Origin: Macrostomum lignano
Lineage: Eukaryota
DNA: 46,531 nt
Reading direction: 5' to 3'
NCBI GenBank assembly: GCA_002269645.1
Contig: NIVC01004424.1
Location: 1-46,531 of the forward strand
The notes below the pieces were generated by a model. The model made no database searches. It was not told the DNA's origin and saw nothing but the letters and a program-made list of their open reading frames with translations. Shown piece by piece: positions 8,205 to 43,756 of the stretch (position 1 is the stretch's first letter; each line of letters begins with the position of its first letter). The translations under genes and the position numbers were made by a program.

Positions 8205-8650
8205 TCTTCATACCTTCTCCATCCCCACAGTCACAAATCATTTAGTTCCCCATCCCCACAGTCACAGATCATTCAGTTCCCCATCCCCACAGTCACAAAT
8301 CATTTAGTTCCCCATCCCCACAGTCACAGATCATTCAGTTCCCCATCCCCACAGTCACAAATCATTTAGTTCCCCATCCCCACAGTCACAAATCATTTAG
8401 TTCCCCATCCCCACAGTCACAAATCATTTAGTTCCCCATCCCCATCCCCACAGTCACAAATCATTTAGTTCCCCATCCCCACAGTCACAAATCATTTAGT
8501 TCCCCATCCCCACAGTCACAAATCATTTAGTTCCCCATCCCCACAGTCACAAATCATTTAGTTCCCCATCCCCACAGTCACAAATCATTTAGTTCCTCAT
8601 CCCCACAGCCACAAATCATTTAGTTCCCCATCCCACAGTCACAAATCCCT
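8205..8650. repeat. 31-bp minisatellite tttagttccccatccccacagtcacaaatca, about 14 copies
   Basis: Direct tandem repetition. Confidence 0.95.
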
Positions 8651-11719: not shown

Positions 11720-11886
11720 CTCAATTACCCCAGCTAATGCCAGTACAGCTGGGTGAACTGCAGCAATGCAGAGTTAAGCAAGTGTCTTGCTTGCTTAAGG
11801 ACACAAACTGTTTCAGTGGGATCGAGAATCGAACCCCCAACCTTCAAGTCGCGAGTCCGACGCTCTAACCACTAGGCTACAATCCC
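11720..11886 (-). mobile_element. tRNA-derived SINE
   Basis: The minus strand starts gggattgtagcctagtggttagagcg (A-box) ... ggttcgattc (B-box), followed by tgtgtccttaagcaag...acacttgcttaac...cacccagctgta, which resembles invertebrate SINE central domains. Confidence 0.75.
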
Positions 11887-14800: not shown

Positions 14801-15579
14801 AGCATCGGCGGCGACCGTCGGGACCTTCAACAAAAGCACCCGATTGGCATCTCAGAGACGGCTGCGTTCCCAAAACTGAAATGGAAGAATCCTCTTCTGC
14901 ATGCAGCATTCAGTCAGTAGACATAATCAGTGAATGAAATGGACGATGGTGACCCTCTAGGCTGACCTGTAGACATACAGGCGACCTTCGGGACCTTCAA
15001 CAGTGCCACCACGCGGCCCCGACGAGCTGACACCGCCAGCATGGTGATTTTTATATCAAGGCATGTCATGTCTGCACATTATGCAATGGTCCTGCACCAT
15101 GTTCAGCACTGGTACACTGGACGACCTTCGGGACATTCAACGGAGTGCCACCAAGAGGGCCAGACAAGCTGGCACCCCCACCATGCTGAACATAGTGCAG
15201 GACCATTCTTCTAGTCTTTCTATTGTTAACTGTCTTGATAAACTTTCTTACTATCCCTGTGTGCTCTTTTGAATAATGTAGTCATTAGAGTTGTTCTAGT
15301 TGTCAGTTAATTTCCTTTTTTATTTTTTTAATCAAACGTTTCCAAACACATAAGCATTTATTGTTATTGGTTACATCTCTTGGTTTAGTTGACTTGGCTT
15401 TATCATTTCTTTGATTTATTATTTATTCCGAAAGATTTTGCTTGTAGGCTGTCAATGACGGTGGCTCCCAGTTTCTAAGATTTTTTAACGACGTTAAGGA
15501 TTCTGTGTTGTAATTAACTAACGCGAGTTCATTTTTAAAGACTGATAACAGCTCCCTCAAAGAGTAGCTTGAATCCGCC

Positions 15580-16740
15580 GTCTGCAGATCCCCATTAACC
15601 CATCTGCAGATCCCCATCATTCCATCTGCAGATCCCCACCATTCGATCTGCAGATCCCCACCATTCCATCTGCAGATCCCCACCAACCCATCTGCAGATC
15701 CCCACAAACCCATCTGCAGATCCCCATTAACCCATCTGCAGATCCCCACCAACCCATCTGCAGATCCCCATTCATCTGCAGATCCCCACCATTCCATCTG
15801 CAGATCCCCATTAACCCATCTGCAGATCCCCACCAACCCACCTGCAGATCCCCACCAACCCATCTGCAGATCCCCACCAACCCACCTGCAGATCCCCACC
15901 AACCCATCTGCAGATCCCCACCATTCCATCTGCAGATCCCCACCAACCCATCTGCAGATCCCCACCATTCCATCTGCAGATCCCCACCAACCCATCTGCA
16001 GATGCCCACCATTCCATCTGCGGATCCCCACTAACCCATCTGCAGATCCCCACCAACCCATCTGCAGATCCCCACTAACCCATCTGCAGATCCCCACCAT
16101 TCCATCTGCAGATGCCCACCATCCCATCTGCAGATCCCCACCATTCCATCTGCAGATCCCCATTAACCCATCTGCAGATCCCCACCATTCCATCTGCAGA
16201 TCCCCACCATTCCATCTGCAGATCCCCACAAACCCACCTGCAGATCCCCACCAACCCATCTGCAGATCCCCACCATTCCATCTGCAGATCCCCACCAACC
16301 CATCTGCAGATGCCCACCATCCCATCTGCAGATCCCCACCATTCCATCTGCAGATCCCCATTAACCCATCTGCAGATCCCCACCATTCCATCTGCAGATC
16401 CCCACCATTCCATCTGCAGATCCCCACAAACCCACCTGCAGATCCCCACCATCCCATCTGCAGATCCCCACCACTCCATCTGCAGATCCCCACCAACCCA
16501 TCTGCAGATGCCCACCATCCCATCTGCAGATCCCCACCATTCCATCTGCAGATCCCCATTAACCCATCTGCAGATCCCCACCATTCCATCTGCAGATCCC
16601 CACCATTCCATCTGCAGATCCCCATTAACCCATCTGCAGATCGCCATTAAACCATCTGCAGATCCCCACCATCCCATCTGCAGATCCCCACCATCCTATC
16701 TTCAGATCCCCACCATCCCGTCTGCAAATCCCCAATTCCC
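15580..16740. repeat. 22-bp minisatellite ccccaccattccatctgcagat, about 52 copies, partly in a 198-bp higher-order repeat
   Basis: Direct repetition. The variant gatgccc recurs at 16001, 16111, 16309 and 16507, the last two spacings being 198 = 9x22. Confidence 0.95.
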
Positions 16741-17044
16741 CGACAAGGACAACTGAAGTTACGTTATTTAAGTTGTCGTTGTTCCCCGACCCTATCCCAT
16801 TCCATCTTTTATGAAAAAAACCTACATAGTGACTGAAATAGTTTATAAACACATATACCCATGACTGCTAATATAGTTAGTGAATATGTAATTATGTAAA
16901 CTATTTTATATTGTCATTAAGTTGACTTTAAAAGCATTACGATCTGATTTAGATATGATGCTCCCTCCTTTTTGACCACCTGGTAATTAAAAGCATTACC
17001 TTATTGCTTATAGTCTACATATTAAATACGCATGAAAAAGTTTG

Positions 17045-17061
17045 TACTTTTTTATTTCCAG
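17045..17061 (+). promoter_or_regulatory. Polypyrimidine splice acceptor (cis or trans-splice) upstream of the ParB-like ORF
   Basis: tacttttttatttccag| lies 46 nt upstream of aaaaATGgcg at 17108. Confidence 0.4.
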
Positions 17062-17229
17062 CATCAATAGCTGCAAATATTTTCATTCCTTCGATAATTT
17101 ATGAAAAATGGCGGCTGCTGCAGCTTCTGAATCGTCTACCGGTACACCTGAACAAATAAAAGAACTGCGTAACTGGCATGGCAGTCAGAACAAAATGTTC
17201 GTGAACACCCTCCGACGGGTGCATATACA

Positions 17230-17970
17230 ATGTACAACATTTCGGATTCGAATTGGGAAAGAACTTACGCTATCGATTGGTTGGAAGCAATTTTGAAATT
17301 GAAAAGAGAAGGCCATTTCTACATTGACTCATTTAAATGGGTAGACGTGCTAAAAGTATACCACTTCGATACAGAAGACCGAAACAAGCCAGCAGATCCA
17401 GCAAGACGAATAGCAGAGCATGATGAAAGTTTCGAAAAACTTAAAAACCGGGTTGCTAATCAGGAAGAAATCCCTCCTGTTAAACTATATCCTTCTACTG
17501 GCGAGCATTCGGACCAGTATAGTCTAATTGATGGAAGGCACCGGATTGCTGCCGTTCACCATCACGGATATCAATTCATTTTAGCTCTAGTGGAGGACAT
17601 TCCATCGACGGATATATCAGAGATGACACTGCTGTTGACTAAACAATATCAATTTTGGCTCGATTACTCATACGTGTGCTCAGTGGCGCTTACGATTGGT
17701 GAGGAAATTCTTAGAAAATGTAGGATATTAGGAAGGGATGTCGGAATTTTACCAAATGAAACAGAAGTAACTGTTAATGTGTGCAGTCGTAACTGCGAGA
17801 ATAAGTTTCGCATTAAGTTGGCTCAAGCTGTGGATAATTATGACCCGAAGAAAGCCGAAAAAATTCAAGTCTTCTTTGCGACGTGCAAAGGGTCTGCCTG
17901 GAAATTCAGCTGTGATTCTGTTGAAGGAGTGGCTAATAATCTGGCTTACAATATATGCAAAAAAGTTTAA
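17230..17970 (+). CDS. Intronless protein with ParB/sulfiredoxin-like N-terminal domain (246 aa; possibly ~287 aa from ATG 17108 across a 1-nt indel)
   Basis: IPPVKLYPSTGEHSDQYSLIDGRHRIAAV matches the ParBc core P.I.V...Y.(L/I)IDG.HR..A. The 741-nt ORF is open within AT-rich surroundings. Confidence 0.7.
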   Translation: MYNISDSNWERTYAIDWLEAILKLKREGHFYIDSFKWVDVLKVYHFDTEDRNKPADPARRIAEHDESFEKLKNRVANQEEIPPVKLYPSTGEHSDQYSLIDGRHRIAAVHHHGYQFILALVEDIPSTDISEMTLLLTKQYQFWLDYSYVCSVALTIGEEILRKCRILGRDVGILPNETEVTVNVCSRNCENKFRIKLAQAVDNYDPKKAEKIQVFFATCKGSAWKFSCDSVEGVANNLAYNICKKV

Positions 17971-19365
17971 CTTAAGGTTGTGTGGCAGGTGTAGCTGTGC
18001 TTAATGTTCTACCCTAAAAGATCCCACCGATTTGTCACCAAGATGTAGCAGGTATGATTTTACTTATTTGTTCTGTCTCTAAGCTATGACTCTTTCTTGG
18101 CAAATTCCTAAGTTCACTCGATTTCTTAGAAATCTCGTGGTAGCTGTGAGTGTCCGAGCGGTAAGACACTGTCTAATTCCCTAAACTAGTTCGAAAGTAT
18201 TGCGTTCTCCGAGGATCAAGGGTGTCCAGCGGCAGCTATCCCACTAAAAATTTTAACCTACTAATACCTTTACGGTTTGTAAATCCTAATGCCTATAATC
18301 ACCTAGCGCCTAATGTGACTATTAGCCTGCACGGCTTTCTTAGGGTGCTCACGATCTCAGTAATTCCCTACTTTCAAGCAATTACTCTGGGTCTCCACGA
18401 TCTCAAGTTTCCCTATTCTGGGTCTAGATGTTGTGCAAATATATTTTTATAGTTTAGTTTAAAGCCGGACTAATAAATATCGAGGTTTCCTTTTGCAGAT
18501 GGGTTAATTACATAAACTCTGGTCGTATGAATGTATGCGCTGCTAAAATGCTCTAAATACAATTATTTAATGCTTATAATCAATGTTAAACTGTGTCCAT
18601 GGTATTGCGCCCAAGGACTTACTCAAGTAACATATATATATAGTTGTCCTTGATTGAGCCCTTGTTTTTTGTTAATTATCTACTGTTGTTATGTTGTTAT
18701 GTAGGATTTTAATGTTTTTTTAGTTTCTATGTAAATTTTTTCAAATTTGTACTTATCATTTATTTTATTAATTTAACTATCTTTTTGTTAATTGTTTGTT
18801 TTTAATTGGTTTCTTAGGTTTAAATAAACTATTTCTTGTTAAAATTTAAATTGTACTTTTCACGCGATTTTCTTAATTACCCTTGCGTGTACGAGCTACT
18901 TTAGTCCGTGTCACCAAATCTATTAAAACAAACAAAAAATCAATTAAATAAGTTCCAACTCGTACGTTGATTGTTAATAAAAATAAAATAAAACTCTAAA
19001 ATGTAGTGTTCTTCGTTTGTTAGTTATTCTTCTGGCGTCACTGAGAAGCTTCTTGATACTTGTATAGGAAGTCCATAAGGCTCTCTCATTTTAACTGCAT
19101 AACTGCATAACTATACTGTATCTATACCCATGCTACGCTTTGCAAACTTTTTTACTCCTAACGTAAAAGATAAAAATTAAAGCAACGATTAGCACTTAGC
19201 TATTCACTCAGTCTAAGTATCACGATAATAATTACGTACATGTACGTGTGATAATTAAAGTTCAATTGCGATTTGCAGGATGCATATTGCAATCCCCGTG
19301 CAAAATTTAAAAAAACTTTCGAGCAATACACTTTCAAGAAAATATCCCTACCGAAATTGCTACAA

Positions 19366-20326
19366 CAAAACAACAACAACAACAACAACAAAATACGCGA
19401 CCCAGCATGCACAGTCACAGTTAGAGCAGGGCGCGTCAGATGGCGCGCCGCAGAGCCTGGGAGCGAACAAAGTCCGCTTCGTTGGCAGTGTCGGGCGCCC
19501 CAGCGTCGCACAGCAGGCAGTCCACGTATCGACGGGTTCGGGCCTGACCCCGCCTGAACGGGCCCTGCAAGGTGAGCAGCAGGACGTCCTGAACGGGTTG
19601 GGGGCAGTAGCCCTCGGCCCGGATCACGTGACCCGCCAGTTGAGGTCGCCGCCGGCGCAAAATGATGGACGGGCGCTGCAGCTTGGCCCGATCGTACAGG
19701 ACCTCGATCCCGACGCTCTCGTCAGCTCGAAAGGCCGCACGGAGCAGCCCTGAGTGCTCCGAGTCCAGCTGCCGCTCCAACGTAGCCGTCAGCGTCCACG
19801 TCTCGGCGTTGTATTAGCAGGACGGTTTCGACCACTGCCTGCCACAGCCGAGCCCTCTGGTGGTCGGGCAGCGCTTCGGACTGGAGGACGGCTGGGATCG
19901 AACGAAAGGCCGCCCAGGCAAGTCCTCTGCGCCGCCGGAGGTCCTCTTCCACGTGGGGCACCAGACCGCCGAGGTAGGTGAACCGCTGGCAGCGTGCGAG
20001 CCTGGTCGTCTGCCCGTCTGCGCCGCGGCACGTCAGGTCCGCTGGAATGTCGGCCGGCACAGTCAGCACCTCGGTCTTCAGCGTGTTGACGATCAGACCG
20101 ACGCTCGATGCCACCTCGACCAGCCTGTCGATCTGGCGCTGGGCGCCTTCAACGGACGAGGACAGGAGGGCGAGGTCGTCGGCGTAGCCAAGCACGCTTA
20201 GGCGCTTTTCGCCGTGGCGGTGACCGATGCGTCTGCGCAGCAGGAAGCCGTCATTAGCCGAGGGGAGTCCGAAGCACCCAGTCCAGAAGCAGCACGAAGA
20301 GGAACGGCGCTAGCGTGTTCTGTTCT
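19366..20326 (-). mobile_element. 5'-truncated RTE-like LINE (RT C-terminal half) with (TTG)n tail and 13-bp TSD
   Basis: TLAPFLFVLLLDWVL, LGYADDLALL, RFTYLG and LLYNAETWTL (with one frameshift near 19810). Tail caacaacaac at 19366-19390. TSD gaaattgctacaa at 19353-19365 and 20327-20339. Confidence 0.9.
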
Positions 20327-21639: not shown

Positions 21640-23073
21640 CTAGGATTCCGTGTAAATGCGAAGAAGAAATTCCAATCGCTTGCCATTCAGCGGCGATTCA
21701 GTCTGTGGCACCACCGTGTAATCACCTGGCGGCAGGGACACGCGGAACACTACCGAGCGCTGGTTGTCTTCGGGGTGTTGAGCCACCTGGTACACGGGTC
21801 GCCTCAGACAGTTAGCCCCTTTATAGATGTCAACAGCTTTGACAGAGAATCGTCGCTTTTCTAGCGGAATGTTGCGCTGCCCCGGCTCTTCCAGACTGAT
21901 CACAACGGTGGCAACTCCGTCCTGATTGCTTCCATCGCAAAAATTTGTCAGGAACGTGTTGTCCTCGAAGAATTCGTCAATTTTTTGACCTGGATACCAC
22001 TCTCCGTAGATGTACTTGCCGTTCCACTCGGCTCCCGTCACGCCGTTGTCCAAATTTCTAGCCAAATGCAAAACTGTCAGGAACTCGAAGAACTTCATAA
22101 AGTCGGACAGCTCCATCCAGTTCTCACCGTCGTCCTGCTTCACTAATCCAGCTAGCTTCATCTGCTCGGGCGTCCACCTGGGATCATTGTCGTTCCATTT
22201 GCCGCGCCATTCAAATTCGCTTAGCGGCCCCCAGGGATTGCAAATCCGGATCAGATCCACCAGCTTGCCATTGTGTGGGATCTGCACTGTGCCTGTGACG
22301 ATGTATTCGTGACCGGACGTCAATCCGAGGCTCTCGAGGTTTTCGCCCAGAATTTCGGTGTGGGTAGCCGCACCAGCGGACAGTTTTTTTGATAGGCAAT
22401 ACTTAATGTTCTCCAGCACCTTTGCCCCGTCCTCCCGCTTGAATGGGATCAACTCGCACACTCCACCAGTGAGGTCGGCCATGGCCTCCAGCTCGAGCCC
22501 GCCAATTAGAGACTCATAGCATCCGTGCAGCTTAGCTAGCGCCTTCTCCAACAGGCAGACCCAGTACTCGCCCTCGTGCGCCGCGGCGTACACAAGCTGG
22601 CCGTCCTTGGTCGGCAGTCTATCGTCCACCATGATCTCCACTTCGCGTCCAAATGGTCGGAAGCGGAACCGGAAGGCGCCGCAGTAACCTGCACCGCTCA
22701 GTGTCTGGTCAGGAAGGATGACCTGGGACAGTAGGTCCGGTCTCTGCGTGATGGCAGCAACAGCAGCCAAGATCCAGCAGTTCTCCAGTTCGCCTTGATT
22801 TATATCAAATCGAGAGAAACCATCTTTGACGAACTCCGGGTCAGCGTCGAGTTCTTTAGGTCGCAGCCACTTGTAATTGAGCTTCTTGTGAGCATAAGTT
22901 AGAGAAGTGTCGTCGGCCGGAAATTCCGGATCTTCAAACAGCCTTTTGCTAGCTCGAAGCTCCCGGATTATCTCATTGTTCTTTTCAACGTTCAGAGTTA
23001 TAAAATTAGTCGTTGACACTCGAAATTGAGAGCAGCTTGCAGTAGAAGGTCTCCAAAACGCCTCTTGCTGCAT
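21640..23073 (-). CDS. Intronless atypical calpain (CysPc + domain III, no penta-EF-hand), predicted active; ~477 aa from ATG 23073
   Basis: FEDPEFPA, DINQGELENCWILAA (Cys), VDDRLPT, WVCLLEKALAKLHGCYESL, GHEY (His), ICNPWG (Asn), and a C-terminal EFLLRIYTES typical of the end of domain III. Confidence 0.9.
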   Translation of the reverse strand: MQQEAFWRPSTASCSQFRVSTTNFITLNVEKNNEIIRELRASKRLFEDPEFPADDTSLTYAHKKLNYKWLRPKELDADPEFVKDGFSRFDINQGELENCWILAAVAAITQRPDLLSQVILPDQTLSGAGYCGAFRFRFRPFGREVEIMVDDRLPTKDGQLVYAAAHEGEYWVCLLEKALAKLHGCYESLIGGLELEAMADLTGGVCELIPFKREDGAKVLENIKYCLSKKLSAGAATHTEILGENLESLGLTSGHEYIVTGTVQIPHNGKLVDLIRICNPWGPLSEFEWRGKWNDNDPRWTPEQMKLAGLVKQDDGENWMELSDFMKFFEFLTVLHLARNLDNGVTGAEWNGKYIYGEWYPGQKIDEFFEDNTFLTNFCDGSNQDGVATVVISLEEPGQRNIPLEKRRFSVKAVDIYKGANCLRRPVYQVAQHPEDNQRSVVFRVSLPPGDYTVVPQTESPLNGKRLEFLLRIYTES

Positions 23074-23661
23074 GACGTTTGCCAGCAAAACTACTAATAA
23101 AATCTGTACAAAGATTAGAAAAAGAGAAGATTATCTCTATTCTCTTTTGAATCAGGGCCGGGTCTTCTTGAACCCGAGTTCCAAGTTATTTGCACATTTA
23201 AATGGGTAAAAAATAGATTTTTCACTGGGAAACCGTATAGTCTATGGGAAAAGTCAATCAATTCTATGCAGTAGAACATACGTCTAAACCATTTTAAAAA
23301 TAGCAAAAAACACAAAATATGAACATAAAATAAACGCAGAGCAAATCAAGTTTAGATGGTGTGAATTGATCACATCCCAGATTAATGCGAGTATAGATTT
23401 ATTGATATTGCAGAATACACCAGGTACAATAGTACGACCTACATTGTATAATTGGCTACATTGTATAATTTACCAGCTACGAGTATATCTGTTACTGGAT
23501 AAATTAGCTCTAATGTTAAAGAGCAACTTTGTATTTTAACCTTTGCAATAACCTTTGCAATTCACAGACTGTGACAAAAACAAACGAAACCGATTTTGAT
23601 TCTACGAAGTTAGATTGAACGATTTAAACAAAAGGCGTGCATATAGTCGTGTATAAACAAT

Positions 23662-26638: not shown

Positions 26639-28012
26639 TTCTCTGGAGATTGAAGAGCTTAGACTAGCTTGTACTGTCTAAATTTCTTCTGGGAGTCTTT
26701 CTTGAGTGCGCTTTGAGTTATTCGCAAAAAATACATTTAGTATATGAAAATTCAAAACTTTCAATTTTATTAACTCATTTTTGAGTTTCGATTGTTAATT
26801 TTCATTTGAAATAAAACGGATCAGTTTGGAGACACTTCGATTTTGTAGCTACTAGTTGTGTCAGACTTTTGCTGATATTTGTAGAGATGCATTAAGTGTT
26901 ACATTTAGTACTTATAATCTTACAGTATTATAGAAAGAAGCTGTTTTCTTCCATAATCCTTTTAAAGATTTTAGTACATTAGGCCCCAATCTCTGCTAAG
27001 AAAAAATGCTATTGCTTTTGATAGGAGGCAGATCCAGTGTTCATCTTTTGATATGTTGTGCATTTCTTATTGCTCTATCGATATTCATAAAGCTTTTCGT
27101 TCAGAAATAGTTTTAAAGGCAGCTTTCAACGGAAAAATACACTACGGAGATAAGAAATTTCACGATTTTCAACACTAAAACAGAGATTGGGTCTCTTAAC
27201 AGTGTCAGAGAAAGTTCTAATCACACTATTTTGTGCCCCACATGCTGCTCTAACGACGCATTAATCGATTTTTCATGTTAAATTGGTCTGGTCATTATTT
27301 CAAATGTTTTTTAATTGATTTAGATTTAGAATTCCTTGGTTAACATGTTGCAGATTGTGCATTTTGTTCGAGAAAATCTTTTTTTTCTCACAAGGGAGTC
27401 AATTTTCTTACTGCCACATATTCTTACATGTACTGCTTCATTAAATTTGTGCAGGATCGAGGTCTGCGGTACCCTGACACAAAGCCTTCGGCGAATTCAT
27501 TCAACAATAGCACTGAAGAAATTTTTGCTCATTCCGCTGACTGCTGAGTAGACGATCACACGGTGTGTTCAGCGGCCCTGACCTTCTAATCGTCAGGAAT
27601 GTACACTATACTCTCTGTGGAGACTGGCCCTCATTGTTGTAAAATGCACGACAACCCCCAGGCGGATGTTGCCCTCCCCAGCATGAACACTTTAAATAAA
27701 TTATCTTCAGACACTCGTTAGATAAACAATGAAAAAGTAGCATATTTTTCGAGATTTTAAAATTAGAAACTTGCAAACTAGAATAAAGTACGGGTCTTTC
27801 GAAAAAATGCTGTGATGGTCAGAAGTTGTTGCAAGAAACTGAAATAATGTTATAGCAGTGAGAGCATTCAACTCAAACTATTTGTTTATGGCATTTCCCT
27901 ACAAGCAAGATGAAGCAATCGGTTGAAGTTATTTGCTTAGTTAGATCAAATCGGAAGTTTAAATATTAGGAGACTATTGTCGTCATAATTAATCTTAGTA
28001 GCTTTTAGAAAC

Positions 28013-28498
28013 ATGGCACTGCGATCAAGCAGTTTGCTGCGAGCATTGCTGCTGCTCAGTCAAACATTCAGTTTTGCTTGGCCCACTGACACCTCAGTCA
28101 GGCATTGCAGAACGAATTCGCACTGGTTGAGATTTAACCTCATCAGCCTGGAGCTTTGGCCCGATCCGGCATCAATCTCGGCGCCAAAGGCGAGCCTGAC
28201 CTATACAACATTATTCAAATGGAGCAGCCTTGACGACAAGACCTACCTGAAATTGGAACACCTCCCACTGCCAGATCCAGCCGAGATCAACGGAGTGTAC
28301 TATTTTAAGCTGAACCAACGACAATACAGATCGGTCAGAAGAAGTCTCGCCAACTTGACCGTCAGTTACAATTCGATGTCTGGGCAGGTGAATCGTTACC
28401 TGGAGTTCCCGATCGAAATCGGCAGTCAAAGATTTCAAAATTACTGGATTTCAATTATGTACTTTTCGGCATTTGGCGGTGTTTGTCCTCTCTGTTAA
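28013..28498 (+). CDS. Secreted-family member C, 161 aa
   Basis: Signal MALRSSSLLRALLLLSQTFSFA, then CRTNSHWL and C-terminal IGSQ...GGVCPLC with the same spacing as the other members. Confidence 0.75.
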   Translation: MALRSSSLLRALLLLSQTFSFAWPTDTSVRHCRTNSHWLRFNLISLELWPDPASISAPKASLTYTTLFKWSSLDDKTYLKLEHLPLPDPAEINGVYYFKLNQRQYRSVRRSLANLTVSYNSMSGQVNRYLEFPIEIGSQRFQNYWISIMYFSAFGGVCPLC

Positions 28499-28767
28499 TT
28501 TTTTTGGGTTAACGCGCTCCATCCCGAGTGCTACTTAAAGTATATGACTTCTTTGCTGCAATCTGTAAACATACAATCGTATAGTCAGATATATCAGATA
28601 TATGTTACAAGTCATTTCAACCCTCTGGGGGGCACCAAAAGAAATTCACAAAACGTTCATTAAATAAGCTGCCAAGTTCTGAAGAATTTCTAAATAACTT
28701 AATAGTAGATTAGCAATGTCCTCATAAAGTTTAGCCATTGTCTTATTTGTCTGAATGCTTGAAATAT

Positions 28768-28917
28768 TGTAGCGGGTCGCCATCACAAACCCGAAATATC
28801 ATAACTCCGAAAACCAAAATAGCGGTTTGCGTTGCTAACACTGCCGGAGTTATGATTTTTCGGGTTTATGATATTTGAGGTTTATGGTATTTCGGGTTTG
28901 TGATGGGCGTTGCTACA
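28768..28917. mobile_element. 150-bp hairpin MITE with TGT...ACA ends
   Basis: tgtagcgggtcgccatcacaaacccgaaata pairs with tatttcgggtttgtgatgggcgttgctaca. No clear TSD. Confidence 0.6.
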
Positions 28918-28997
28918 TGTAAATCGGTATTCGAAGTTGTGATTTTTCGGGTTTGTGATGCTCCCCATTGTTCTAGTTAAAAATCCATTTTCTGATG

Positions 28998-29573
28998 TCA
29001 TTTCTGTGGTCTATCGCTCGTGATGATGTGGTGCTTTGTGTCATGTTTAACTTTGGTGGCCGGAGGTAGCCGCCCTCCTTCGACGTACGTGAAGGTGCTG
29101 CGGTAACGATCGATGAGTGCGCGTACACGAGGATCGCAGTGGTCTGGATACGCCAGCGACACGGCGAGTTCATCGAGGTCCACTGCGGTAACCGGCAGAG
29201 ATGGCGTATGTAGTCTCGTTGTAGGGTCAACTAGTCGACGCCCCTTGCAGTCGACGATCAATTCGAAATGACTGAGGAAGTCGTACCCCAGGATAGGTTG
29301 CACGACGGATGCGACCAGGAACGTCCAGCGGAATTCACGACGGAGTCCTCGGATGTTGACGTCGAGCGAGATCTCTCCAGCGACCGGTATCGATGCACCG
29401 GTGGCGGTGGTCAGGCGAAATCCGGTCTCCTGAAGGTCCCGGTGGAATTGCTTCTGCGGAATTATCGACACTGCTGCGCCGGTATCGAGCAGGAACGGGT
29501 AGTACTTGCTGTCTATCTTGATATCCACCACCAGGAATTTCTTGCTCGCCGCCGGGGATGATGCACTGCTCAC
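28998..29573 (-). CDS. Gypsy aspartic protease and start of pol (truncated)
   Basis: FLLDTGAAVSII, ILGYDFLSHF, IVDCKGRRL and HHIIT. Confidence 0.85.
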   Translation of the reverse strand: MSSASSPAASKKFLVVDIKIDSKYYPFLLDTGAAVSIIPQKQFHRDLQETGFRLTTATGASIPVAGEISLDVNIRGLRREFRWTFLVASVVQPILGYDFLSHFELIVDCKGRRLVDPTTRLHTPSLPVTAVDLDELAVSLAYPDHCDPRVRALIDRYRSTFTYVEGGRLPPATKVKHDTKHHIITSDRPQK

Positions 29574-29596
29574 TGCGGCAGGTTGGGCAGTGCCCT

Positions 29597-30496
29597 CTAG
29601 TTTGACGGCTGACGTGTCGGAGAGGCTGACCTGGACTGTGCAGGTGTCTTTTCGTGAGTACTCAGAATTCGCGGCCGCCTACCACCCAAGGCGGACGGGA
29701 AACGACACCACGGTCGGCAGGTAAGCGCGCGTTCACCGTAGTAGATGTGGGCCCGGCAGACGACCGGACGCTGTCCTGGCTTGAACGGGGTGACGCTTGT
29801 CTGTGGCTGCAGTTGTCGGCGTGGCGGTTCGTCCCGTCTGGAGTTGATAGTCGGCGGTGGCGTCGGCTGTACAGCGCTGACTGAGCTCGCCGAGCTCTGG
29901 TAGCTGACCATGAAATCAGCGATTTCAGCGAGCTTATCTGGCGATTCCTGCTGGAAGCCTGATAGTGCGACTCGTAGCTCACTGGGCAGGCAGCGGATGA
30001 GAGTCGCCTTGAGCATGTCGGAGCAGGAGCCCATGCCGCACTGAGCCATCTTGGCGCTGAGCTTCTTGACGAAGATTGAGGGCTTGTCGCCACCTAGATC
30101 GGACGTGGCCAGGATCTCGTTGATCTTCTCCTGCTGACTCTTCTGCAGAAGGTTGGAGATGGCGGCTTTAAGCGGCTCGTACTGTCGAGGCGTTGATGTC
30201 GTGATCAGCATCGACGAGATATCCTCCGGCAGGTGCGCAACCAAGTAGTGGTACTTGGTCTCGTCCGAAGTTATGCGCGCTAGGTGGAATTGCGACTCTA
30301 GGGTCCGGAACCAAGCTTCCGAATTGTTCCGGTACAGCGGCGGAACCTTAACGGACACGGCGGACACGCTTGGCTCAAGTATCGGTGGTGTATGTTGAAC
30401 AGGTAGCTGCCCAGTGGGGTTGAGCACCGGGGCCTGGTTGTTGTCGGCGGCTGCTGCGGCCTGCTGCGATAGCTGCGGATCGCTTTCGTCGGCCAT
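29597..30496 (-). CDS. Gypsy gag
   Basis: VKVPPLYRNNSEAWFRTLESQF, LGGDKPS, LPSELRVAL and C-terminal CRAHIYYGERALTCRPWC, typical of Gypsy gag. Confidence 0.85.
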   Translation of the reverse strand: MADESDPQLSQQAAAAADNNQAPVLNPTGQLPVQHTPPILEPSVSAVSVKVPPLYRNNSEAWFRTLESQFHLARITSDETKYHYLVAHLPEDISSMLITTSTPRQYEPLKAAISNLLQKSQQEKINEILATSDLGGDKPSIFVKKLSAKMAQCGMGSCSDMLKATLIRCLPSELRVALSGFQQESPDKLAEIADFMVSYQSSASSVSAVQPTPPPTINSRRDEPPRRQLQPQTSVTPFKPGQRPVVCRAHIYYGERALTCRPWCRFPSALGGRRPRILSTHEKTPAQSRSASPTRQPSN

Positions 30497-30515
30497 GACG
30501 ACTCACCGGACCAGT

Positions 30516-30906
30516 TGTAGCGACTGTAAAATGAAAAAGGTAGAGCTAGGCGGTGGTTCGCCCTTGTTTGCTTCTTTGTTTGGCACTTGAGTTTCTCGAA
30601 TATCCAAAGAGGCTTGGAGCAGATGCTGGTTTAGCTACTGTATATTTATACTTAATTGACCTTCCGGAAATTTCTAGAATCATTTTAGTGCGGTAAAACA
30701 AACTGTATAGTAAGTATCGTACGTACGGTATTCATATTTTGTATGATGATGAATTACAGTAAATAAATATTTATTGAGTAGAAATATTTACTACGAGATT
30801 AGAAATAGCTAGATAAAGAATATTCTAGAATTTAACTGGTACTGTATTGCAGAAATTTCGGGAAGTAAACATCATACGGTATAGAACTTTCGCGAAGGTC
30901 ACTACA
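30516..30906 (-). repeat. Gypsy 5' LTR (391 bp)
   Basis: Ends tgtagcgac (30516) and gtcactaca (30906), adjacent to the PBS. Confidence 0.75.
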
Positions 30907-31092
30907 GTTACACAGTCAATAAGCAATATTAAGTGAATATCATTAATAACTTTAAACATTTAACTATACCTTTACCAGTTTTGTGATGCCGTATGCAGTT
31001 AAGCGCTGCGTTACCCTTAGGTTAGCAATAAAGGTTTAGTACAATAGCAGAATCTTCAACAGATAAACAAGACAACAGCACTATAACAAAAG

Positions 31093-31421
31093 TTCACCAA
31101 CACTTTAGTTCCCCAGCACTTTAGTTCCCCAGCACTTTAGTTCCCCAGCACTTTAGTTCCCCAGCACTTTAGTTCACCAGCACTTTAGTTCACCAGCACT
31201 TAGTTCCCCAGCACTTTAGTTCACCAGCACTTTAGTTCACCAGCACTTTAGTTCACCAGCACTTTAGTTCACCAGCACTTTAGTTCACCAGCACTTTAGT
31301 TCACCAGCACTTTAGTTCACCAGCACTTTAGTTCACCAGCACTTTAGTTCACCAGCGCTTTAGTTCTCCAGCACTTTAGTTCACCAGCACTTTAGTTCAC
31401 CAGCGCTTTAGTTTTCCAGCA
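31093..31421. repeat. 16-bp minisatellite accagcactttagttc, about 20 copies
   Basis: Direct tandem repetition. Confidence 0.95.
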
Positions 31422-31597
31422 CCGATAAACTGAACTGGCTTTGTTGAAATTAAGTTCGACATTTCCCTACTTTACTGGAAAACCCATACTTAACGTGTCA
31501 AAAGCAAGTAGTGCAAGGAGCAGTGCAAGTCCCAATGCAAATCCAGAGTGAAAAAAAAACACTTTTGCCAGCATTTCCACCGGTAGATATTCAACAT

Positions 31598-32877: not shown

Positions 32878-34263
32878 TCACGTGAACACTCGAAGCAAAA
32901 ACTCCACCCTGTTGCCTTCAATCAGGGTCTCAATGCGAGGAATGACAACATAATCGCCAGGTCGCAGACTTGCTCTTGAAACAAATTGTCTTTCCAACTC
33001 CGTTCCCGTGAATCGCATCAAAGGTTCGCCTTCGGGCAACTTGCCCGGATAAATTTCAATGATTTTCTTGGCGAATTCCGAGCCATCAGGGTACAGATGG
33101 CGTCGTTCACCCTCTTCCAAACTGATAATGACGTACGCCGACCCATCCGGATTTGCTGACGCACCGGAAACGGTAAAGCTGAAGCGGTCGTCATGATAGA
33201 ACTCATCCGGACCCTGGTTCATCGTCCACGCTCCGTAGACCTTCTTGCCAGTCCACTCTGACCCGGTCACGCCGCAGTCTAAATTTCTGGCCAAATGAAG
33301 AATTTGAACGGACTCAAACATTGGCACGAAATCAGAAAACTCAATTGTAGTTTCACCTTCTGTAGCATTGGCTTGCAACTGGTACCAGTCGGATGACAAG
33401 CGGGTATATTCTTGATCTAGCAAAGCTCTTCTATAATCCAAAATCTTCACAACATCGATTGAACTGCCGTCCCGTGGAACCTGAGCAGTGCCGCTAATAA
33501 TATAATGGCCTCCTGGCGGCAGGTTGGGCAATTTTTTCATGCATTTTTCAGCGTCATCGCTGCTTTCATTGCGTGCACAGAACGCTTCAACGATCAGTTC
33601 CCGTTTTAAAGCTGACTGCAATATTTTCAGTAAATCGTCCACCTTGATTTCTCTTACATAGATCTCTTCGCAAACTCCACCAGTGAGTAGTGGCAATAGC
33701 TCTAACGATGCGCAAGTTGGTACATCTTCGTATGAGCCGAACAGCTTAGCAAAAGCCTTCTCGAGTAGGCACAGCCAGAACTGGCCACGGTGAGTTCCGG
33801 AAAACGCTAGTTCCCCGTTTATAGTAGGGAGCCGATCGTCAATAGTGAGCTCAAATTCTTGGCCAAATTGGCGAAAGATGAAGCGAACAGAACCGTCATA
33901 GTTCTTGCCGTGCAGTGTCTGACCCGGTGGAATAACGCTGTGTAAGAGGTCCTGCCGATTTCCGATTCGGGCTAGACATAGTAATAAGCAATAGTTGGCA
34001 CTTTGACCTCTGACGTTCGCGTTGAATCCCGACCCGACGTTAACGTCTCCGACCTCGAACAGTAGTGCTGTGCCATTTCCGGTCATTTCGTGCGGCCTTA
34101 GCCAGACTAAAGGTTTAGAATGGTATCTTCCTGATGTCGAATGGGCCTGATGCTCATCATCCTGTCCAGCATGTACAGAACTGTAATCGGCTGGAAATTC
34201 CGGATCTTTAAGCGGCTTTTCTCCGGGTTTCAGCTTTTTAAACGCTTTGAAAAGTCTCTTCAT
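32878..34263 (-). CDS. Intronless calpain-like protein, predicted catalytically inactive (461 aa)
   Basis: LKDPEFPA, IDDRLPT, WLCLLEKAFAKLFGSYE and EFLLRVFT are colinear with calpain A. Triad positions read RGQSANYC (C->Y), GGHY (H->G) and LDYR (N->D). Confidence 0.88.
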   Translation of the reverse strand: MKRLFKAFKKLKPGEKPLKDPEFPADYSSVHAGQDDEHQAHSTSGRYHSKPLVWLRPHEMTGNGTALLFEVGDVNVGSGFNANVRGQSANYCLLLCLARIGNRQDLLHSVIPPGQTLHGKNYDGSVRFIFRQFGQEFELTIDDRLPTINGELAFSGTHRGQFWLCLLEKAFAKLFGSYEDVPTCASLELLPLLTGGVCEEIYVREIKVDDLLKILQSALKRELIVEAFCARNESSDDAEKCMKKLPNLPPGGHYIISGTAQVPRDGSSIDVVKILDYRRALLDQEYTRLSSDWYQLQANATEGETTIEFSDFVPMFESVQILHLARNLDCGVTGSEWTGKKVYGAWTMNQGPDEFYHDDRFSFTVSGASANPDGSAYVIISLEEGERRHLYPDGSEFAKKIIEIYPGKLPEGEPLMRFTGTELERQFVSRASLRPGDYVVIPRIETLIEGNRVEFLLRVFT

Positions 34264-35270: not shown

Positions 35271-36579
35271 GTCTTCACCAGGGCCAGGCTCACTCAACTC
35301 GGGCCAAACCTGGTTTTCCCTGACGTTTGCGGGTTCGAGAGCATACCGCTGCTCGCCCGGTACCTCAGGGACACGGGACGAGCTGAGTTCTTCTCCACCG
35401 CCGGTGAGGAGGACCGCGCGGCAGGTGAAATCGACGGGTCCCCCTGAGAGACATCACTTTGATGGAAAACATTGGTCGCCAGTGGCCAGCGAAATGGGCG
35501 GCGCGCCTCCTCCGCCTAGCGTTGCCCCCTGCAGCTGAGTCAACTCTATTGACGAGTAGATCGACCCATTGACAATAGAATAGAATTGTACACAATCACC
35601 CGGGAGAACAGCTAAACTGACAATTTATCCCAGAATAGCGTCAAAAGAGAAAACGCAGAATGCGGTCTGTTTTCCGAAATTTGCGCATCATACAGCGCAT
35701 ACAGCGTCCCCGTTTTATCTGTTGCTTTAGCTATTAAAAGCATCGCAGTTTGTAATGCAACAACTGTGTAAAAATACCTACCTTGTACCTAGTTGCATTG
35801 GTATAAAATGAATAATGAAAAGTTAATGAATAATAATAGCCTAATCGATTCGTTTTGGCCGAAAAATAAGCTTCTTTAAGCTTCGTTGCTTCTCTCTGAC
35901 CGCTCGCCCTGTGACTGTATTGTTTTGCTAACTTTCTAACGACGGCAAACCCAAAACAGAAATTATATGCGCAAATCTAAAAAGCAGGCATTCCGTCACG
36001 CTAGACGCCTCGGGTAGCTGCAACACCCACTGAGTTTGTTTATTTCTTCTCAGCAAATTTTGTGGTTTTTGCGAGTCAAAAACGAACAAAAAAGTTTTAA
36101 AGACATTTAATTTAAGCTACTCGACAAGCACTTTGATTTGCGATACTCGCCAAGTTGGAGGTTCCTTGCGATCTTTTCAGCAGCCAAGTTTACAGAAAGT
36201 TTAAACCGCATGCATAAGGAGAGTAATCTTTGCTGCAAGTGAAAGCGACGTGAACTTTTAGCCATTTGTGCTGTTGCGTGCAAGGTGAAGGTGTTAAATT
36301 ACAACCTTAAACAGGTATGCGTTGTACGAGACTGCAAAAATTTCGAGTGTATTTTGTATTCAGGATTCAAATTGTCGTGGGAGCGAATGCAGGTTTAAAT
36401 TTGCAATGATTTTGCAAGAACAGAAAGGATGAGAGCGCAAAGTTATTTCCAAACTGGTTCGGTCTTAGCTTAGAGCTACATGTAGGTCGCAACTCTGTCT
36501 AACAAAAATGAAATATTCTGTCTGAAATACCAGTACTATCTAACAGGTGTCTACCATTCTGCCTAGCCGGTGTGTGAGG

Positions 36580-38228: not shown

Positions 38229-38994
38229 GAAACAGTCGTGTGTGTGTTGCACTCTATCATGTGTATCACTTATGCACTGTAAAAAAGGTGCGAAAGTTAG
38301 ACACAGTACAAAACACTTAGAAACTGTGAAAATATTCAGAATAAAATTATACGTTAAGTCACTAATTTTTTTGAACTCATTCAGAATTCCCAAACACAGC
38401 CGAGATCTCGGTTCTGAAAAGAGCTGCTCGAATAATGAATGACTCATGCCGGTAAACGCAAGCTTATATGCATACATGTCTACACATGTAAACATGCAGT
38501 CAGAATTGCCGAAAATTCGGGTTTATAAAGACGCGAATTAATGCCAAGCCATGGAAACTTGATCCGTTTCATTCGCAATATTATATATGTGCAGCATTGG
38601 CGGAGTGCTGTGACAGGCTCTGCATGCATGCGGTGTAACTCCGCGGGTGCCAAAAGAAAGTGGTTTTCTCTGACAGTGTTCCCCCGCATGCCTGCTGTTG
38701 CTACCAGCTTCTGGAGTCATACAATCCAATTATATTATTAGCTTTTTCACCTGTGGTCGAATCGGAGAAGCTCTTGACTAAGCAATTAGGTTAAAAAAGC
38801 AAGCCGGTCGCCCAGGAGTCGAACAGGCTCAGGCCAACACTATAAAGAATGAAATGTTGCCATTTTAGCCCTAGAAATTGCGTAGAATCCTAATTAATAA
38901 AAAACGCCTACGGCCGCTCTCTTTCTGCCACGAGCAACTTCTCGAAAGTTAGGAAAACTCTGCAGACAAAAAAGCCCAGCGCCTGGACAAAGTT

Positions 38995-43573: not shown

Positions 43574-43659
<86 letters not shown>

Positions 43660-43660
43660 A

Positions 43661-43747
<87 letters not shown>

Positions 43748-43756
43748 GTGTCTGTG

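What the first reader, a model, noticed from the sequence alone, without database searches (positions are those of the whole stretch)
17230..17970. Bacterial-style ParB-like domain in an animal genome
The motif IPPVKL...YSLIDGRHRIAA is the ParB N-terminal (CTPase/nuclease-fold) signature. Eukaryotic sulfiredoxins instead have F(G/S)GCHR with a catalytic Cys, which is absent here. The ORF is intronless, has an unrecognised Cys-containing C-terminal half, and is embedded among clearly eukaryotic repeats. Inference: a horizontally acquired or virus/transposon-borne gene with possible nucleotide-binding or kinase-like activity.
Basis: partly seen in the sequence, partly recalled or inferred. Interest (0 to 1): 0.72.

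Follow-up and report, generated by a model that had tools for sequence, protein, structure and literature searches.

The report
Fast-evolving ParB-fold gene in a flatworm
The ORF belongs to a real nuclear gene of the flatworm Macrostomum lignano that encodes a very divergent ParB-type nucleotide-binding domain joined to an unknown tail. Its two genomic copies differ about ten times more than the DNA around them, which points to rapid adaptive evolution, not to recent transfer from bacteria or viruses.

Summary
ORF 17230..17970 (+, 246 aa) exists and carries the quoted motif. Its only profile matches are to the ParB N-terminal (ParB-CTPase/Srx) fold. They are below the curated cut-offs but reproducible: three family members each hit PF02195 and TIGR00180, and a family profile hits ParB/Spo0J/Noc structures (E 7.6e-5).

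The window is contig NIVC01004424.1 of the Macrostomum lignano assembly Mlig_3_7. The ORF is only the main body of a gene spanning 17108..17970. A collinear sister contig holds an intact 276-aa copy, and relative to it the window copy carries one frameshift.

The family is tiny. It comprises the two M. lignano copies and one relative (32-36% identity) from an unidentified AT-rich organism. No relative turned up in 1.84 billion proteins, IMG/VR, metagenomes, GTDB genomes, phages or plasmids. Recent horizontal transfer and carriage by a virus or transposon are therefore unsupported.

Most striking, the two copies are 55% identical in protein inside flanks that are 98-99% identical. The frames stayed open (p <= 0.0002 by simulation), and dN/dS is about 3 in the unknown C-terminal half.

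My best reading is an orphan NTP-binding ParB-fold protein with a diversifying C-terminal module. It is neither a partition protein nor a sulfiredoxin.

The parts
17108..17970 (+). ParB-fold gene of M. lignano, window copy, intronless. It is interrupted by one frameshift relative to the intact 276-aa sister copy, so the start codon and the 246-codon main body (the finding's ORF 17230..17970) are in different frames. There are no premature stops in the main body.
   Evidence: ORFs. The intact sister ORF is L002:16312..17142(-). Homology to P0001 and to the sister copy extends upstream of 17230. Start context is A at -3 and G at +4 in both copies.
17395..17634 (+). ParB N-terminal (ParB-CTPase/Srx) fold, residues 56-135 of the main ORF
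   Evidence: PF02195 E 4.3e-4, profile positions 17-91 of 95. TIGR00180 E 1.3e-4. Family profile against PDB: 4umk E 7.6e-5, 6t1f 4e-3, 7ol9 6.5e-3. The sister copy and P0001 hit the same models independently.
17428..17481 (+). Box I-like (C-motif) helix plus loop, S67-V84, ending in the E-E-I-P-P-V loop/strand
   Evidence: Aligned to the corresponding helix-loop-strand of ParB/Spo0J/Noc. The motif definition comes from PMC12704722. The assignment is by alignment only.
17533..17544 (+). Box II P-motif GxxR (G102-R-H-R105), inside the invariant D-G-x-H-R-I-A-A-V string
   Evidence: It is the only GxxR in each of the three family members and lies at the homologous position. It aligns with the G-E-R-R of ParB structures. 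The Arg of this motif is essential for NTP binding in the fold (PMC12704722).
17638..17967 (+). Lineage-specific C-terminal module (residues 137-246) with 6 Cys shared by the two M. lignano copies. No known relative; dN/dS is about 3.
   Evidence: No Pfam or PDB relative. Omega 2.97, bootstrap 95% CI 1.46-8.5. Alignment.
17014..17970 (+). Hyperdivergent island between the two homeologous contigs (74-85% nt identity, against 97-99% on both sides). It ends at the stop codon.
17046..17061 (+). Polypyrimidine tract followed by AG, 47 nt upstream of the start codon: a possible trans-splice or 3' splice acceptor (inferred, not shown)
   Evidence: Read directly from the sequence. A similar pyrimidine tract plus AG occurs in the sister copy. 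Trans-splicing is common in M. lignano (PMC5730564).
15581..16734 (.). Neighbour: 22-nt satellite (about 52 copies) immediately upstream, shared with the sister contig

Best explanation
The finding is the main body of a genuine, intronless nuclear gene (17108..17970) of the flatworm Macrostomum lignano. The full-length product, seen intact on the sister contig at 276 aa, has three parts.

(i) A short conserved N-terminal segment.
(ii) A highly divergent ParB-CTPase/Srx fold with a Box I-like helix-loop and an invariant Box II P-motif (D-G-x-H-R-I-A-A-V). By analogy with all characterised members of the fold, it most probably binds a nucleoside triphosphate through the motif's Arg.
(iii) A lineage-specific C-terminal module of about 110 aa, containing Cys, with no known relative.

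The protein lacks everything that makes ParB a DNA-partition clamp (ParA-binding motif, Box III, HTH, dimerisation domain), and it lacks the sulfiredoxin Cys. I therefore read it as an 'orphan' ParB-fold NTP-binding switch or enzyme whose C-terminal module contacts a rapidly changing partner. The gene evolves extremely fast under selection that keeps it coding: the two homeologous copies have diverged about 10-fold more than their flanks, with dN > dS in the C-terminal module. That speed also explains why no relatives or donor lineage can be recognised.

The window's own copy has one frameshift separating its start codon from the main body. It may be a recently disabled copy, an N-terminally shortened product from the ATG at 17230, or a residual assembly error.

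Shown here: the gene model, the fold-level homology (sub-threshold but replicated), the genomic integration, the restricted distribution, and divergence with a preserved frame. Inferred: NTP binding, partner recognition by the C-terminal module, and a role in some genetic or sexual conflict.
For: Fold. PF02195 is the only Pfam hit of all three members (E 4.3e-4, 6.2e-3, 0.14). TIGR00180 is hit by all three, through the N-terminal part of the model only (E 1.3e-4, 5e-6, 4.1e-4). The family profile against PDB gives ParB/Spo0J 4umk at E 7.6e-5, ParB 6t1f and Noc 7ol9. All annotated weak tblastn hits in plasmids are ParB/RepB N-domains. Each member has a single GxxR at the homologous site.

Real host gene. 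The window is M. lignano contig NIVC01004424.1, and a collinear sister contig, NIVC01001642.1, carries an intact 276-aa copy at the same position. A relative, P0001, exists in a second organism (E 1.3e-9 against 1.84e9 proteins; pairwise E 3e-35 with the sister copy).

Selection. The median identity of 250-bp bins across 21 kb is 0.992 (minimum 0.925), but 0.74-0.85 over the gene. The subgenomes normally differ by 1.4-2.4% (PMC10733133). The 162 substitutions placed at random create 7-8 stops on average, and zero stops occurs in <= 0.02% of replicates. All 5 indels in the main ORF are in-frame. Omega is 1.34 overall and 2.97 (CI 1.46-8.5) in the C-terminal half. Differences by codon position are 66/51/45.

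Not ParB proper and not Srx. There is no ParA motif, GERR, Box III or Srx Cys, no HTH or other domain, and no Srx chain among the PDB hits.
Against: Every profile hit is below the curated family cut-off (20.7 against 26.3 bits for PF02195).

No usable structure model could be obtained (pLDDT 38-39), so the fold has not been confirmed in three dimensions.

No expression evidence is available here. Neither M. lignano copy appears in the protein collections, which do hold annotated M. lignano proteins, so the gene has escaped annotation and may be weakly expressed or not expressed.

The window copy carries a frameshift.

Overall omega is not significantly above 1 (CI 0.91-2.09).

Silent sites (9.8% at four-fold sites) and the non-coding 5' leader (27%) are also more diverged than the flanks (2.4%). 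Positive selection alone does not explain this.

No shared canonical poly(A) hexamer lies near the stop.
Confidence: 0.55

Rival explanations
1. The divergent island reflects different ancestry, not in-situ adaptive change. One or both loci were overwritten by ectopic gene conversion from unseen, diverged paralogs of a multigene family. Alternatively, the two copies descend from old allelic lineages kept by balancing selection and captured at polyploidisation, with recombination having homogenised the flanks. This rival is compatible with the gene being functional and concerns only how the divergence arose.
For: Four-fold degenerate sites at conserved residues (5/51, 9.8%) and the non-coding 5' leader (23/86, 27%) are significantly more diverged than the immediate flanks (10/417, 2.4%). 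The island boundaries are sharp, within tens of bases. Both copies are derived relative to the outgroup P0001 (22 against 14 changes, not significant).
Against: No third copy was seen in the 46.5-kb window, in the 21-kb sister locus, or beside a paralogous calpain locus. dN exceeds dS in the C-terminal half, and differences cluster in codons (40 multi-hit codons and 122 identical), which needs selection as well. The rest of the genome could not be searched with these tools.
Confidence: 0.35
2. The gene was acquired horizontally and recently from a bacterium, phage or eukaryotic virus, or it is cargo of a transposon or integrated virus.
For: The fold is overwhelmingly prokaryotic, phage or plasmid-borne, and apart from sulfiredoxin it is rare in eukaryotes (PMC12704722). 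The gene is intronless. Its GC3 (0.37-0.38) is lower than that of the neighbouring calpain ORFs (0.49-0.63). Retroelement fragments lie nearby. The sequence is closer to ParB/Spo0J/Noc than to Srx.
Against: There is no relative at E <= 1e-3 other than P0001 among 1.84e9 representative proteins. Nothing was found in IMG/VR, JGI metagenomes or GTDB genomes by peptide patterns. None of 133 loci seeded with the family's most conserved core showed extended similarity. Phages gave no match and plasmids only noise-level ParB cores. There are no flanking terminal repeats or second copies; the one weak inverted repeat has an arm inside a window-only insertion. The position is the same in two homeologous contigs, so the gene predates their split. 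The neighbouring calpain ORFs are intronless too.
Confidence: 0.1
3. The locus is a decaying pseudogene or an unexpressed relic ORF in both copies, and the ParB similarity is a fossil without present function.
For: There is one frameshift in the window copy. Overall omega is close to 1 (1.34, CI 0.91-2.09). Neither copy is in the annotated protein collections. No conserved poly(A) signal was seen.
Against: Neutral decay cannot outrun the neutral flanks ten-fold. It would also have introduced about 7-8 stops and out-of-frame indels, yet 246 and 276 codons are open and all 5 indels are in-frame (p <= 0.0002). Motif residues are invariant across three members at 28-57% identity.
Confidence: 0.12
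4. The gene is a vertically inherited, highly diverged paralog of animal sulfiredoxin that lost its catalytic Cys.
For: Sulfiredoxin is the common eukaryotic member of the fold (PMC12704722). The P-motif has H-R in the positions where ParB has R-R. The protein has no HTH.
Against: No sulfiredoxin chain appears among PDB hits up to E = 10 with either the single sequence or the family profile, while ParB, Spo0J, Noc and SbnI do. The best NCBIfam models are ParB/RepB/Spo0J. The position of the Srx Cys holds R/I/I and is not conserved.
Confidence: 0.05

Closest known systems
ParB/Spo0J/Noc N-terminal CTPase domain (Pfam PF02195, TIGR00180; PDB 4umk, 6t1f/7bm8, 7ol9, 1vz0)
   Same: These are the best and only consistent profile and PDB matches. 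The alignment covers the Box I helix-loop-strand and the Box II GxxR P-motif over about 80 residues.
   Different: All scores are below the curated cut-offs. The motif is G-x-H-R and not G-E-R-R. There is no Box III, no ParA-binding motif, no HTH and no C-terminal dimerisation domain. The protein is eukaryotic and nuclear-encoded, with no ParA or parS context.
Sulfiredoxin (Srx), the usual eukaryotic member of the fold
   Same: It is a eukaryotic, small, HTH-less protein built around one ParB fold, with His-Arg at the end of the P-motif.
   Different: The catalytic Cys is absent and its position is variable (R/I/I). No Srx structure appears among the sequence hits. There are extra conserved N-terminal and C-terminal modules.
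Free-serine kinases SerK / SbnI (ParB-fold ATP/ADP-dependent enzymes)
   Same: They are HTH-less ParB-fold enzymes. There are weak core hits: NF053625 at E 3.3e-3 over residues 94-132 and SbnI 5uje at E 1.4.
   Different: The score is 16.6 bits against an equivalog cut-off of 380. Only the roughly 40-residue P-motif region matches, and there is no similarity outside it.
Orphan ParB-like proteins fused to lineage-specific domains, including the DndB, GmrSD_N (DUF262) and DUF6551 branches (survey in PMC12704722)
   Same: The architecture logic is the same: a ParB fold lacking Box III and the ParA motif, fused to a lineage-specific module. The exact D-G-x-H-R-I-A-A-V core string occurs in prokaryotic and viral proteins of these branches. 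Many of them act in genetic-conflict systems.
   Different: There is no extended similarity to any of 133 such loci (best E 0.009). The flatworm proteins have no Pfam hit to DndB, GmrSD_N or DUF6551. The host is an animal.

Membership tests
ParB N-terminal / ParB-CTPase fold (Pfam PF02195) | Score at or above Pfam's gathering threshold (26.3 bits) | tested here: not met
   20.7, 17.0 and 12.6 bits for the window ORF, the sister ORF and P0001. It is nevertheless the only family hit for each.
ParB N-terminal / ParB-CTPase fold (Pfam PF02195) | Box II P-motif GxxR with conserved Arg | tested here: met
   There is a single GxxR per protein at the homologous column (GRHR / GIHR / GIHR); G, H and R are invariant. 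It aligns to the G-E-R-R of ParB structures.
ParB N-terminal / ParB-CTPase fold (Pfam PF02195) | Box I (C-motif) helix plus loop preceding the strand | tested here: inconclusive
   Residues 67-84 align to that element in 1vz0, 6t1f and 4umk, but there is no reliable 3D model to confirm it.
ParB N-terminal / ParB-CTPase fold (Pfam PF02195) | Three-dimensional ParB/Srx fold | tested here: inconclusive
   AlphaFold2 models have pLDDT 39.2 and 38.3, too poor for a fold search.
ParB N-terminal / ParB-CTPase fold (Pfam PF02195) | Binding of CTP, ATP or GTP | not testable with these tools
   According to PMC12704722, nucleotide specificity cannot be predicted from sequence or from AlphaFold3.
Canonical ParB/RepB/Spo0J partition protein (TIGR00180) | Full-length match above the cut-off (58.45 bits), including the HTH part | tested here: not met
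   21.8, 26.4 and 20.1 bits; only profile positions of about 13-94 of 186 are matched.
Canonical ParB/RepB/Spo0J partition protein (TIGR00180) | ParA-binding motif (L/F/I)G(K/R)G(L/F/I) | tested here: not met
   Absent in all three members.
Canonical ParB/RepB/Spo0J partition protein (TIGR00180) | Box III (E-N-x-x-R type) P-motif | tested here: not met
   There is no such string after Box II in any member. The one 'ENKFR' in the window copy lies in the C-terminal module and is not conserved.
Canonical ParB/RepB/Spo0J partition protein (TIGR00180) | parA partner gene and parS context | tested here: not met
   The neighbours are a satellite, retroelement fragments and calpain ORFs.
Sulfiredoxin | Catalytic Cys in the G-G/S-C-H-R motif | tested here: not met
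   No such string is present; the position holds R, I and I.
Sulfiredoxin | Sequence similarity to solved Srx structures | tested here: not met
   No Srx chain appears among PDB hits at E <= 10.
SerK / SbnI free-serine kinase (NF053625) | Equivalog-level match (380 bits) | tested here: not met
   16.6 bits over 39 residues for the window ORF; no hit for the sister ORF or P0001.
Mobile-element or viral cargo gene | Terminal repeats, target-site duplication, adjacent transposase/integrase/capsid genes, several copies | tested here: not met
   No second copy in the window, no credible flanking repeats, the same position in two homeologous contigs, and no IMG/VR relative. Genome-wide copy number is not testable with these tools.

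The most novel reading that the evidence does not exclude
Animals, or at least macrostomid flatworms, possess a previously unnoticed non-sulfiredoxin ParB-fold NTP switch or enzyme that has been recruited into an evolutionary arms race such as sexual conflict, self/non-self recognition, a selfish toxin-antidote-like pair, or defence against mobile elements. Its unknown C-terminal module would act as a diversifying specificity determinant, kept as hyperdivergent homeologs or alleles inside otherwise near-identical DNA. This would be a eukaryotic parallel to the orphan ParB-fold fusions of prokaryotic conflict systems.
Probability: 0.2. Interest if true: 0.8.

Novelty: new variant of a known kind. 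Interest (0 to 1): 0.5.

Why it matters
According to the latest survey (PMC12704722), the ParB-CTPase fold is represented in eukaryotes essentially by sulfiredoxin. That survey used the Pfam gathering cut-off, which this family fails, so it would have missed it. A second, architecturally new animal family would extend the fold's known range. It would also offer an example of how quickly such a domain can drift out of recognisability.

Separately, a roughly 1-kb island with 23% nucleotide and 45% protein divergence, inside 98-99% identical homeologous DNA and with the reading frame preserved, is a clean candidate for diversifying or balancing selection. It occurs in a neopolyploid model flatworm with good public genomic and expression resources.

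The finding is also a caution against reading 'bacterial-looking domain, intronless, no homologs' as horizontal transfer.

Tried and rejected
1. Structure prediction was tried twice, with a single sequence and with a 2-sequence alignment. Both gave pLDDT of about 38-39, so no fold search was run.
2. The word-indexed protein search with the window ORF and with P0001 found nothing new.
3. In the exhaustive search, P0002 and P0003 are repeat or low-complexity artefacts (one has a repeated 'DLADGRHEL' unit) and were discarded.
4. Peptide-pattern scans of viral, metagenome and prokaryote genome collections gave no relatives. A DNA-pattern scan for the conserved core gave 133 loci, none of them related beyond the core.
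5. Exact-product look-ups of the window ORF and of a calpain ORF returned nothing. A look-up of a paralogous calpain locus found no additional family member.
6. PADLOC defence models gave no hit.
7. A hypermutation (deaminase-type) explanation for the island was rejected. The substitution spectrum is balanced, with 74 transitions and 88 transversions.
8. A short intron as an explanation for the frame change was rejected. The sister copy and P0001 read straight through the corresponding stretch in one frame.
9. The organism behind P0001 (Logan assembly of SRR12274743) could not be identified. The accession is in no searchable paper. A nearby accession is an Iridian Genomes invertebrate genome skim, which is only a hint.
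10. The weak inverted repeat 16835-16855 / 18815-18835 was rejected as an element boundary, because its right arm lies inside a window-only insertion that is absent from the sister contig.
Full report
1. THE OBSERVATION

It carries I-P-P-V-K-L (residues 81-86) and Y-S-L-I-D-G-R-H-R-I-A-A (residues 97-108). It has no sulfiredoxin-type G-G/S-C-H-R string and no ParB G-E-R-R string.

Against Pfam its only hit is PF02195 ParB_N (E 4.3e-4, 20.7 bits, residues 56-135, profile positions 17-91 of 95). This is below the gathering score of 26.3. NCBIfam gives TIGR00180 ParB/RepB/Spo0J (E 1.3e-4) and, much more weakly, the SerK, Noc and RepB models. PHROGs gives a 'ParB-like partition protein' family (E 3.6e-5). 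PADLOC gives nothing. A single-sequence search of PDB gives only Spo0J, ParB and Noc, at non-significant E-values.

2. WHERE THE WINDOW COMES FROM

The neighbouring ORFs are two calpains (Peptidase_C2 E 6.6e-87 and 2.5e-38) and a gag-like (DUF7041) plus aspartic-protease pair. The closest named calpains are from Macrostomum lignano. An exact-product look-up shows that the window is the whole 46,531-bp contig NIVC01004424.1 of GCA_002269645.1. That assembly is the Mlig_3_7 assembly of M. lignano (PMC5730564). It was built from PacBio reads with Canu and polished with Pilon. The 'animal genome' part of the finding is therefore correct: the host is a free-living flatworm.

3. A SISTER COPY GIVES THE GENE MODEL

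The same calpain protein lies on a second contig of the same assembly, NIVC01001642.1 (locus L002). The two contigs are collinear over about 21 kb. At the corresponding position L002 has an intact 276-aa ORF (L002:16312..17142, minus strand of the locus). It is 55% identical to the window ORF.

That ORF starts about 40 residues further upstream, with an ATG in a good context (A at -3, G at +4). In the window, the equivalent start codon is the ATG at 17108. It has the same context and a stop two codons upstream in its frame, but it lies in a different reading frame from the main ORF. Similarity to relatives also continues upstream of the ATG at 17230 in the main frame.

The window gene is therefore 17108..17970, and relative to its sister copy it carries exactly one frameshift. 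Its main body has no premature stop. A short intron is not a credible alternative, because the sister copy and the outside relative read straight through in one frame. Given the PacBio origin of the assembly, I cannot tell whether the frameshift is real or a residual single-base error. All comparisons used the pieces as they stand.

A pyrimidine tract followed by AG at 17046-17061, 47 nt before the start codon, could be a trans-splice acceptor. Trans-splicing is frequent in this species. This is inference only.

4. HOW GOOD IS THE ParB ASSIGNMENT

An exhaustive HMMER scan of 1.84 billion representative proteins found a single true relative, P0001. It is 281 aa, with E 1.3e-9 and 32% identity to the window ORF, and a pairwise E of 3e-35 with 36% identity to the sister ORF over residues 3-190. 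The two other hits are repeat artefacts.

With three members the assignment can be replicated. PF02195 is the only Pfam hit of each member (E 4.3e-4, 6.2e-3, 0.14). TIGR00180 is hit by each (1.3e-4, 5e-6, 4.1e-4), always through the N-terminal-domain part of the model and never the HTH part. A profile of the three sequences raises the PDB matches to significance:
- Helicobacter ParB/Spo0J 4umk, E 7.6e-5;
- Caulobacter ParB 6t1f/7bm8, E 4e-3;
- Noc 7ol9, E 6.5e-3;
- SbnI, at noise level.

Even the noise-level tblastn hits in plasmids are all ParB/RepB N-domains.

In the three-way alignment the string D-G-x-H-R-I-A-A-V is invariant. It contains the only GxxR of each protein. This aligns with the Box II P-motif of ParB, whose Arg is essential for NTP binding across the fold (PMC12704722).

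I conclude that the ParB-CTPase/Srx fold is well supported at the sequence level. The family nevertheless fails every curated family cut-off, and I could not confirm the fold in three dimensions. Two AlphaFold2 runs gave pLDDT 39 and 38, so I ran no fold search.

5. WHAT IT IS NOT

It is not a partition ParB. It has no ParA-binding motif, no Box III, no HTH and no dimerisation domain, and there is no parA gene or operon context.

It is not sulfiredoxin. The Cys position holds R/I/I, and no Srx structure appears among PDB hits up to E = 10.

It is not SerK or SbnI: 16.6 bits against a 380-bit cut-off.

The C-terminal 110 residues match nothing. Six Cys are shared by the two M. lignano copies, but only two align with Cys in P0001, so a conserved metal site is not established.

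6. DISTRIBUTION AND THE TRANSFER HYPOTHESIS

Apart from P0001, no relative was found anywhere:
- the word-indexed 5.8-billion-cluster collection;
- IMG/VR, JGI metagenomes and 185,579 prokaryotic genomes searched by peptide patterns;
- phages and plasmids;
- 133 viral and metagenomic loci retrieved with the family's most conserved core as a DNA pattern (best E 0.009, core only).

The carriers of that core string are GmrSD_N, DndB and DUF6551-type members of the wider ParB superfamily. The core is therefore generic to the superfamily and is not a trace of a donor.

P0001 comes from a 1,075-bp contig of a Logan assembly of SRR12274743, with 28% GC. I could not identify the organism.

Around the window gene there are no terminal repeats and no second copy. 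The gene occupies the same position on both contigs. Contamination, chimeric assembly and recent transfer or insertion are thus excluded or unsupported. An ancient acquisition hidden by fast evolution remains possible. The lower GC3 of the gene (0.37-0.38, against 0.49-0.63 for the calpains) is compatible with that, but it is weak evidence.

7. THE UNEXPECTED PART: A HYPERDIVERGENT ISLAND

M. lignano is a neopolyploid with three subgenomes that differ by 1.4-2.4% in SNPs (PMC10733133). The two contigs fit this. Across 62 well-aligned 250-bp bins outside the gene and the satellite, the median identity is 99.2% and the minimum 92.5%. The four bins over the gene are 74-85% identical.

The island starts about 90 nt before the start codon, near 17014, and ends at the stop codon. 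Identity is 97-99% directly on either side.

Within the 236 aligned codons of the main ORF:
- there are 162 nucleotide differences, distributed 66/51/45 over codon positions 1/2/3;
- transitions number 74 and transversions 88, with no deaminase-like bias;
- Nei-Gojobori dN is 0.289 and dS 0.216;
- omega is 1.34 overall (bootstrap CI 0.91-2.09), 0.94 in the first 140 codons, and 2.97 (CI 1.46-8.5) in the C-terminal module.

This is not decay. Placing the same 162 substitutions at random creates 7-8 stop codons on average and leaves the frame open in at most 0.02% of 5,000 replicates. All five indels in the main ORF are in-frame. Differences also cluster: 40 codons have two or more changes and 122 have none.

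So both copies diverged while being kept protein-coding, with an excess of amino-acid change. This is the signature of diversifying selection. What selection alone does not explain is that four-fold sites at conserved residues (5/51, 9.8%; p = 0.016 against the flanks) and the non-coding leader (23/86, 27%; p = 4e-12) are also more diverged than the flanks (10/417, 2.4%). That suggests deeper ancestry of the island, through old allelic lineages or conversion from unseen paralogs. I carry this as the main rival for how the divergence arose. It is not exclusive of selection.

8. MECHANISM, WITH STATUS OF EACH STEP

Shown:
- a host-integrated, intronless gene;
- a replicated though sub-threshold ParB-fold N-terminal domain with an intact P-motif;
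- a novel C-terminal module;
- fast, frame-preserving divergence.

Inferred from the family's established biochemistry (PMC12704722): the domain binds a nucleoside triphosphate through Box II and the Box I loop. Which nucleotide cannot be predicted. The Box I loop is Pro-rich and hydrophobic, a weak trend reported there for ATP binders.

Inferred from the selection pattern: the C-terminal module is the part that meets a changing partner, and nucleotide binding or turnover regulates or powers that interaction.

Speculative: the arena of the conflict, whether reproductive, self/non-self, or against mobile elements.

The window copy itself may be disabled or N-terminally shortened. The intact sister copy is the better representative of the gene.

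9. COMPARISON WITH WHAT IS KNOWN, AND NOVELTY

The closest known things are the ParB/Spo0J/Noc N-domain by sequence, and by architecture the 'orphan' ParB-fold proteins fused to lineage-specific domains described in PMC12704722. That survey states that in eukaryotes the common representative is sulfiredoxin. It searched with PF02195 at the gathering cut-off, which this family does not reach. I therefore rate the finding as a new variant of a known kind: a known fold, with a new architecture, a new host range and unusual evolutionary dynamics.

10. VERDICT

Interest is 0.5. It is a real non-Srx ParB-fold gene in an animal, sitting in a sharply bounded hyperdivergent island. The finding is limited by the lack of expression and structural evidence and by a family of only three sequences.

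Noticed in passing
window 15581-16734: A 22-nt satellite (about 52 copies, 88% matches) lies directly upstream of the gene and is shared with the sister contig. It generates long spurious ORFs on both strands, for example 15423..16625 (-) of 400 aa.
   Followed up: partly
window 36539-38244; 8215-8647; 31091-31422; 43574-43927: Further tandem arrays: a 26-nt unit x 65.6 copies (96% matches), a 31-nt unit x 13.8, a 16-nt unit x 20.8, and (CTGT)n x 89.
   Followed up: no
window 21640-23088 (-) and 32878-34263 (-): Two uninterrupted calpain ORFs (Peptidase_C2 plus Calpain_III, without EF-hand domains). The first encodes a protein 100% identical to one on the sister contig. The nearest named relatives are M. 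lignano calpains at only 51% and 40% identity.
   Followed up: partly
window 28998-30496 (-): Gag-like (DUF7041) and retroviral-type aspartic-protease ORFs of an LTR-retroelement fragment. No reverse-transcriptase or integrase ORF was seen among the larger ORFs nearby. The stretch 27250-30750 is 100% identical between the two contigs, more alike than the surrounding DNA.
   Followed up: partly
window 19722-20195 (-): A GC-rich ORF with a weak match to the C-terminal end of reverse transcriptase RVT_1 (E 9.6e-5). It is probably a truncated non-LTR retrotransposon about 1.3 kb downstream of the gene, and it is present on both contigs.
   Followed up: partly
window 18203-18991: A segment of about 790 bp present in the window but absent from the sister contig, AT-rich with an A-rich right end. 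It is probably an insertion in the window or a deletion in the sister. It contains the right arm of the only inverted repeat that brackets the gene.
   Followed up: partly
between window 21496 and 21498 (L002 11576-13578): The sister contig has about 2 kb of extra sequence here, just downstream of the calpain ORF, that the window lacks.
   Followed up: no
window 11817-11886 (-): An Rfam tRNA match just above the gathering score (32.6 against 29 bits) that ARAGORN does not call. It may be a tRNA-derived repeat or a degenerate tRNA.
   Followed up: no
window 17014-17107: The 94-nt leader upstream of the start codon is as diverged between the two contigs (27%) as the non-synonymous sites of the gene, although it is apparently non-coding. 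This is unexplained.
   Followed up: partly
L001 (Logan SRR12274743 contig, 1075 bp): The only outside relative is an uninterrupted 281-codon ORF on a 28%-GC contig from an unidentified sample. Its last roughly 90 residues do not align with the flatworm C-terminal module.
   Followed up: partly
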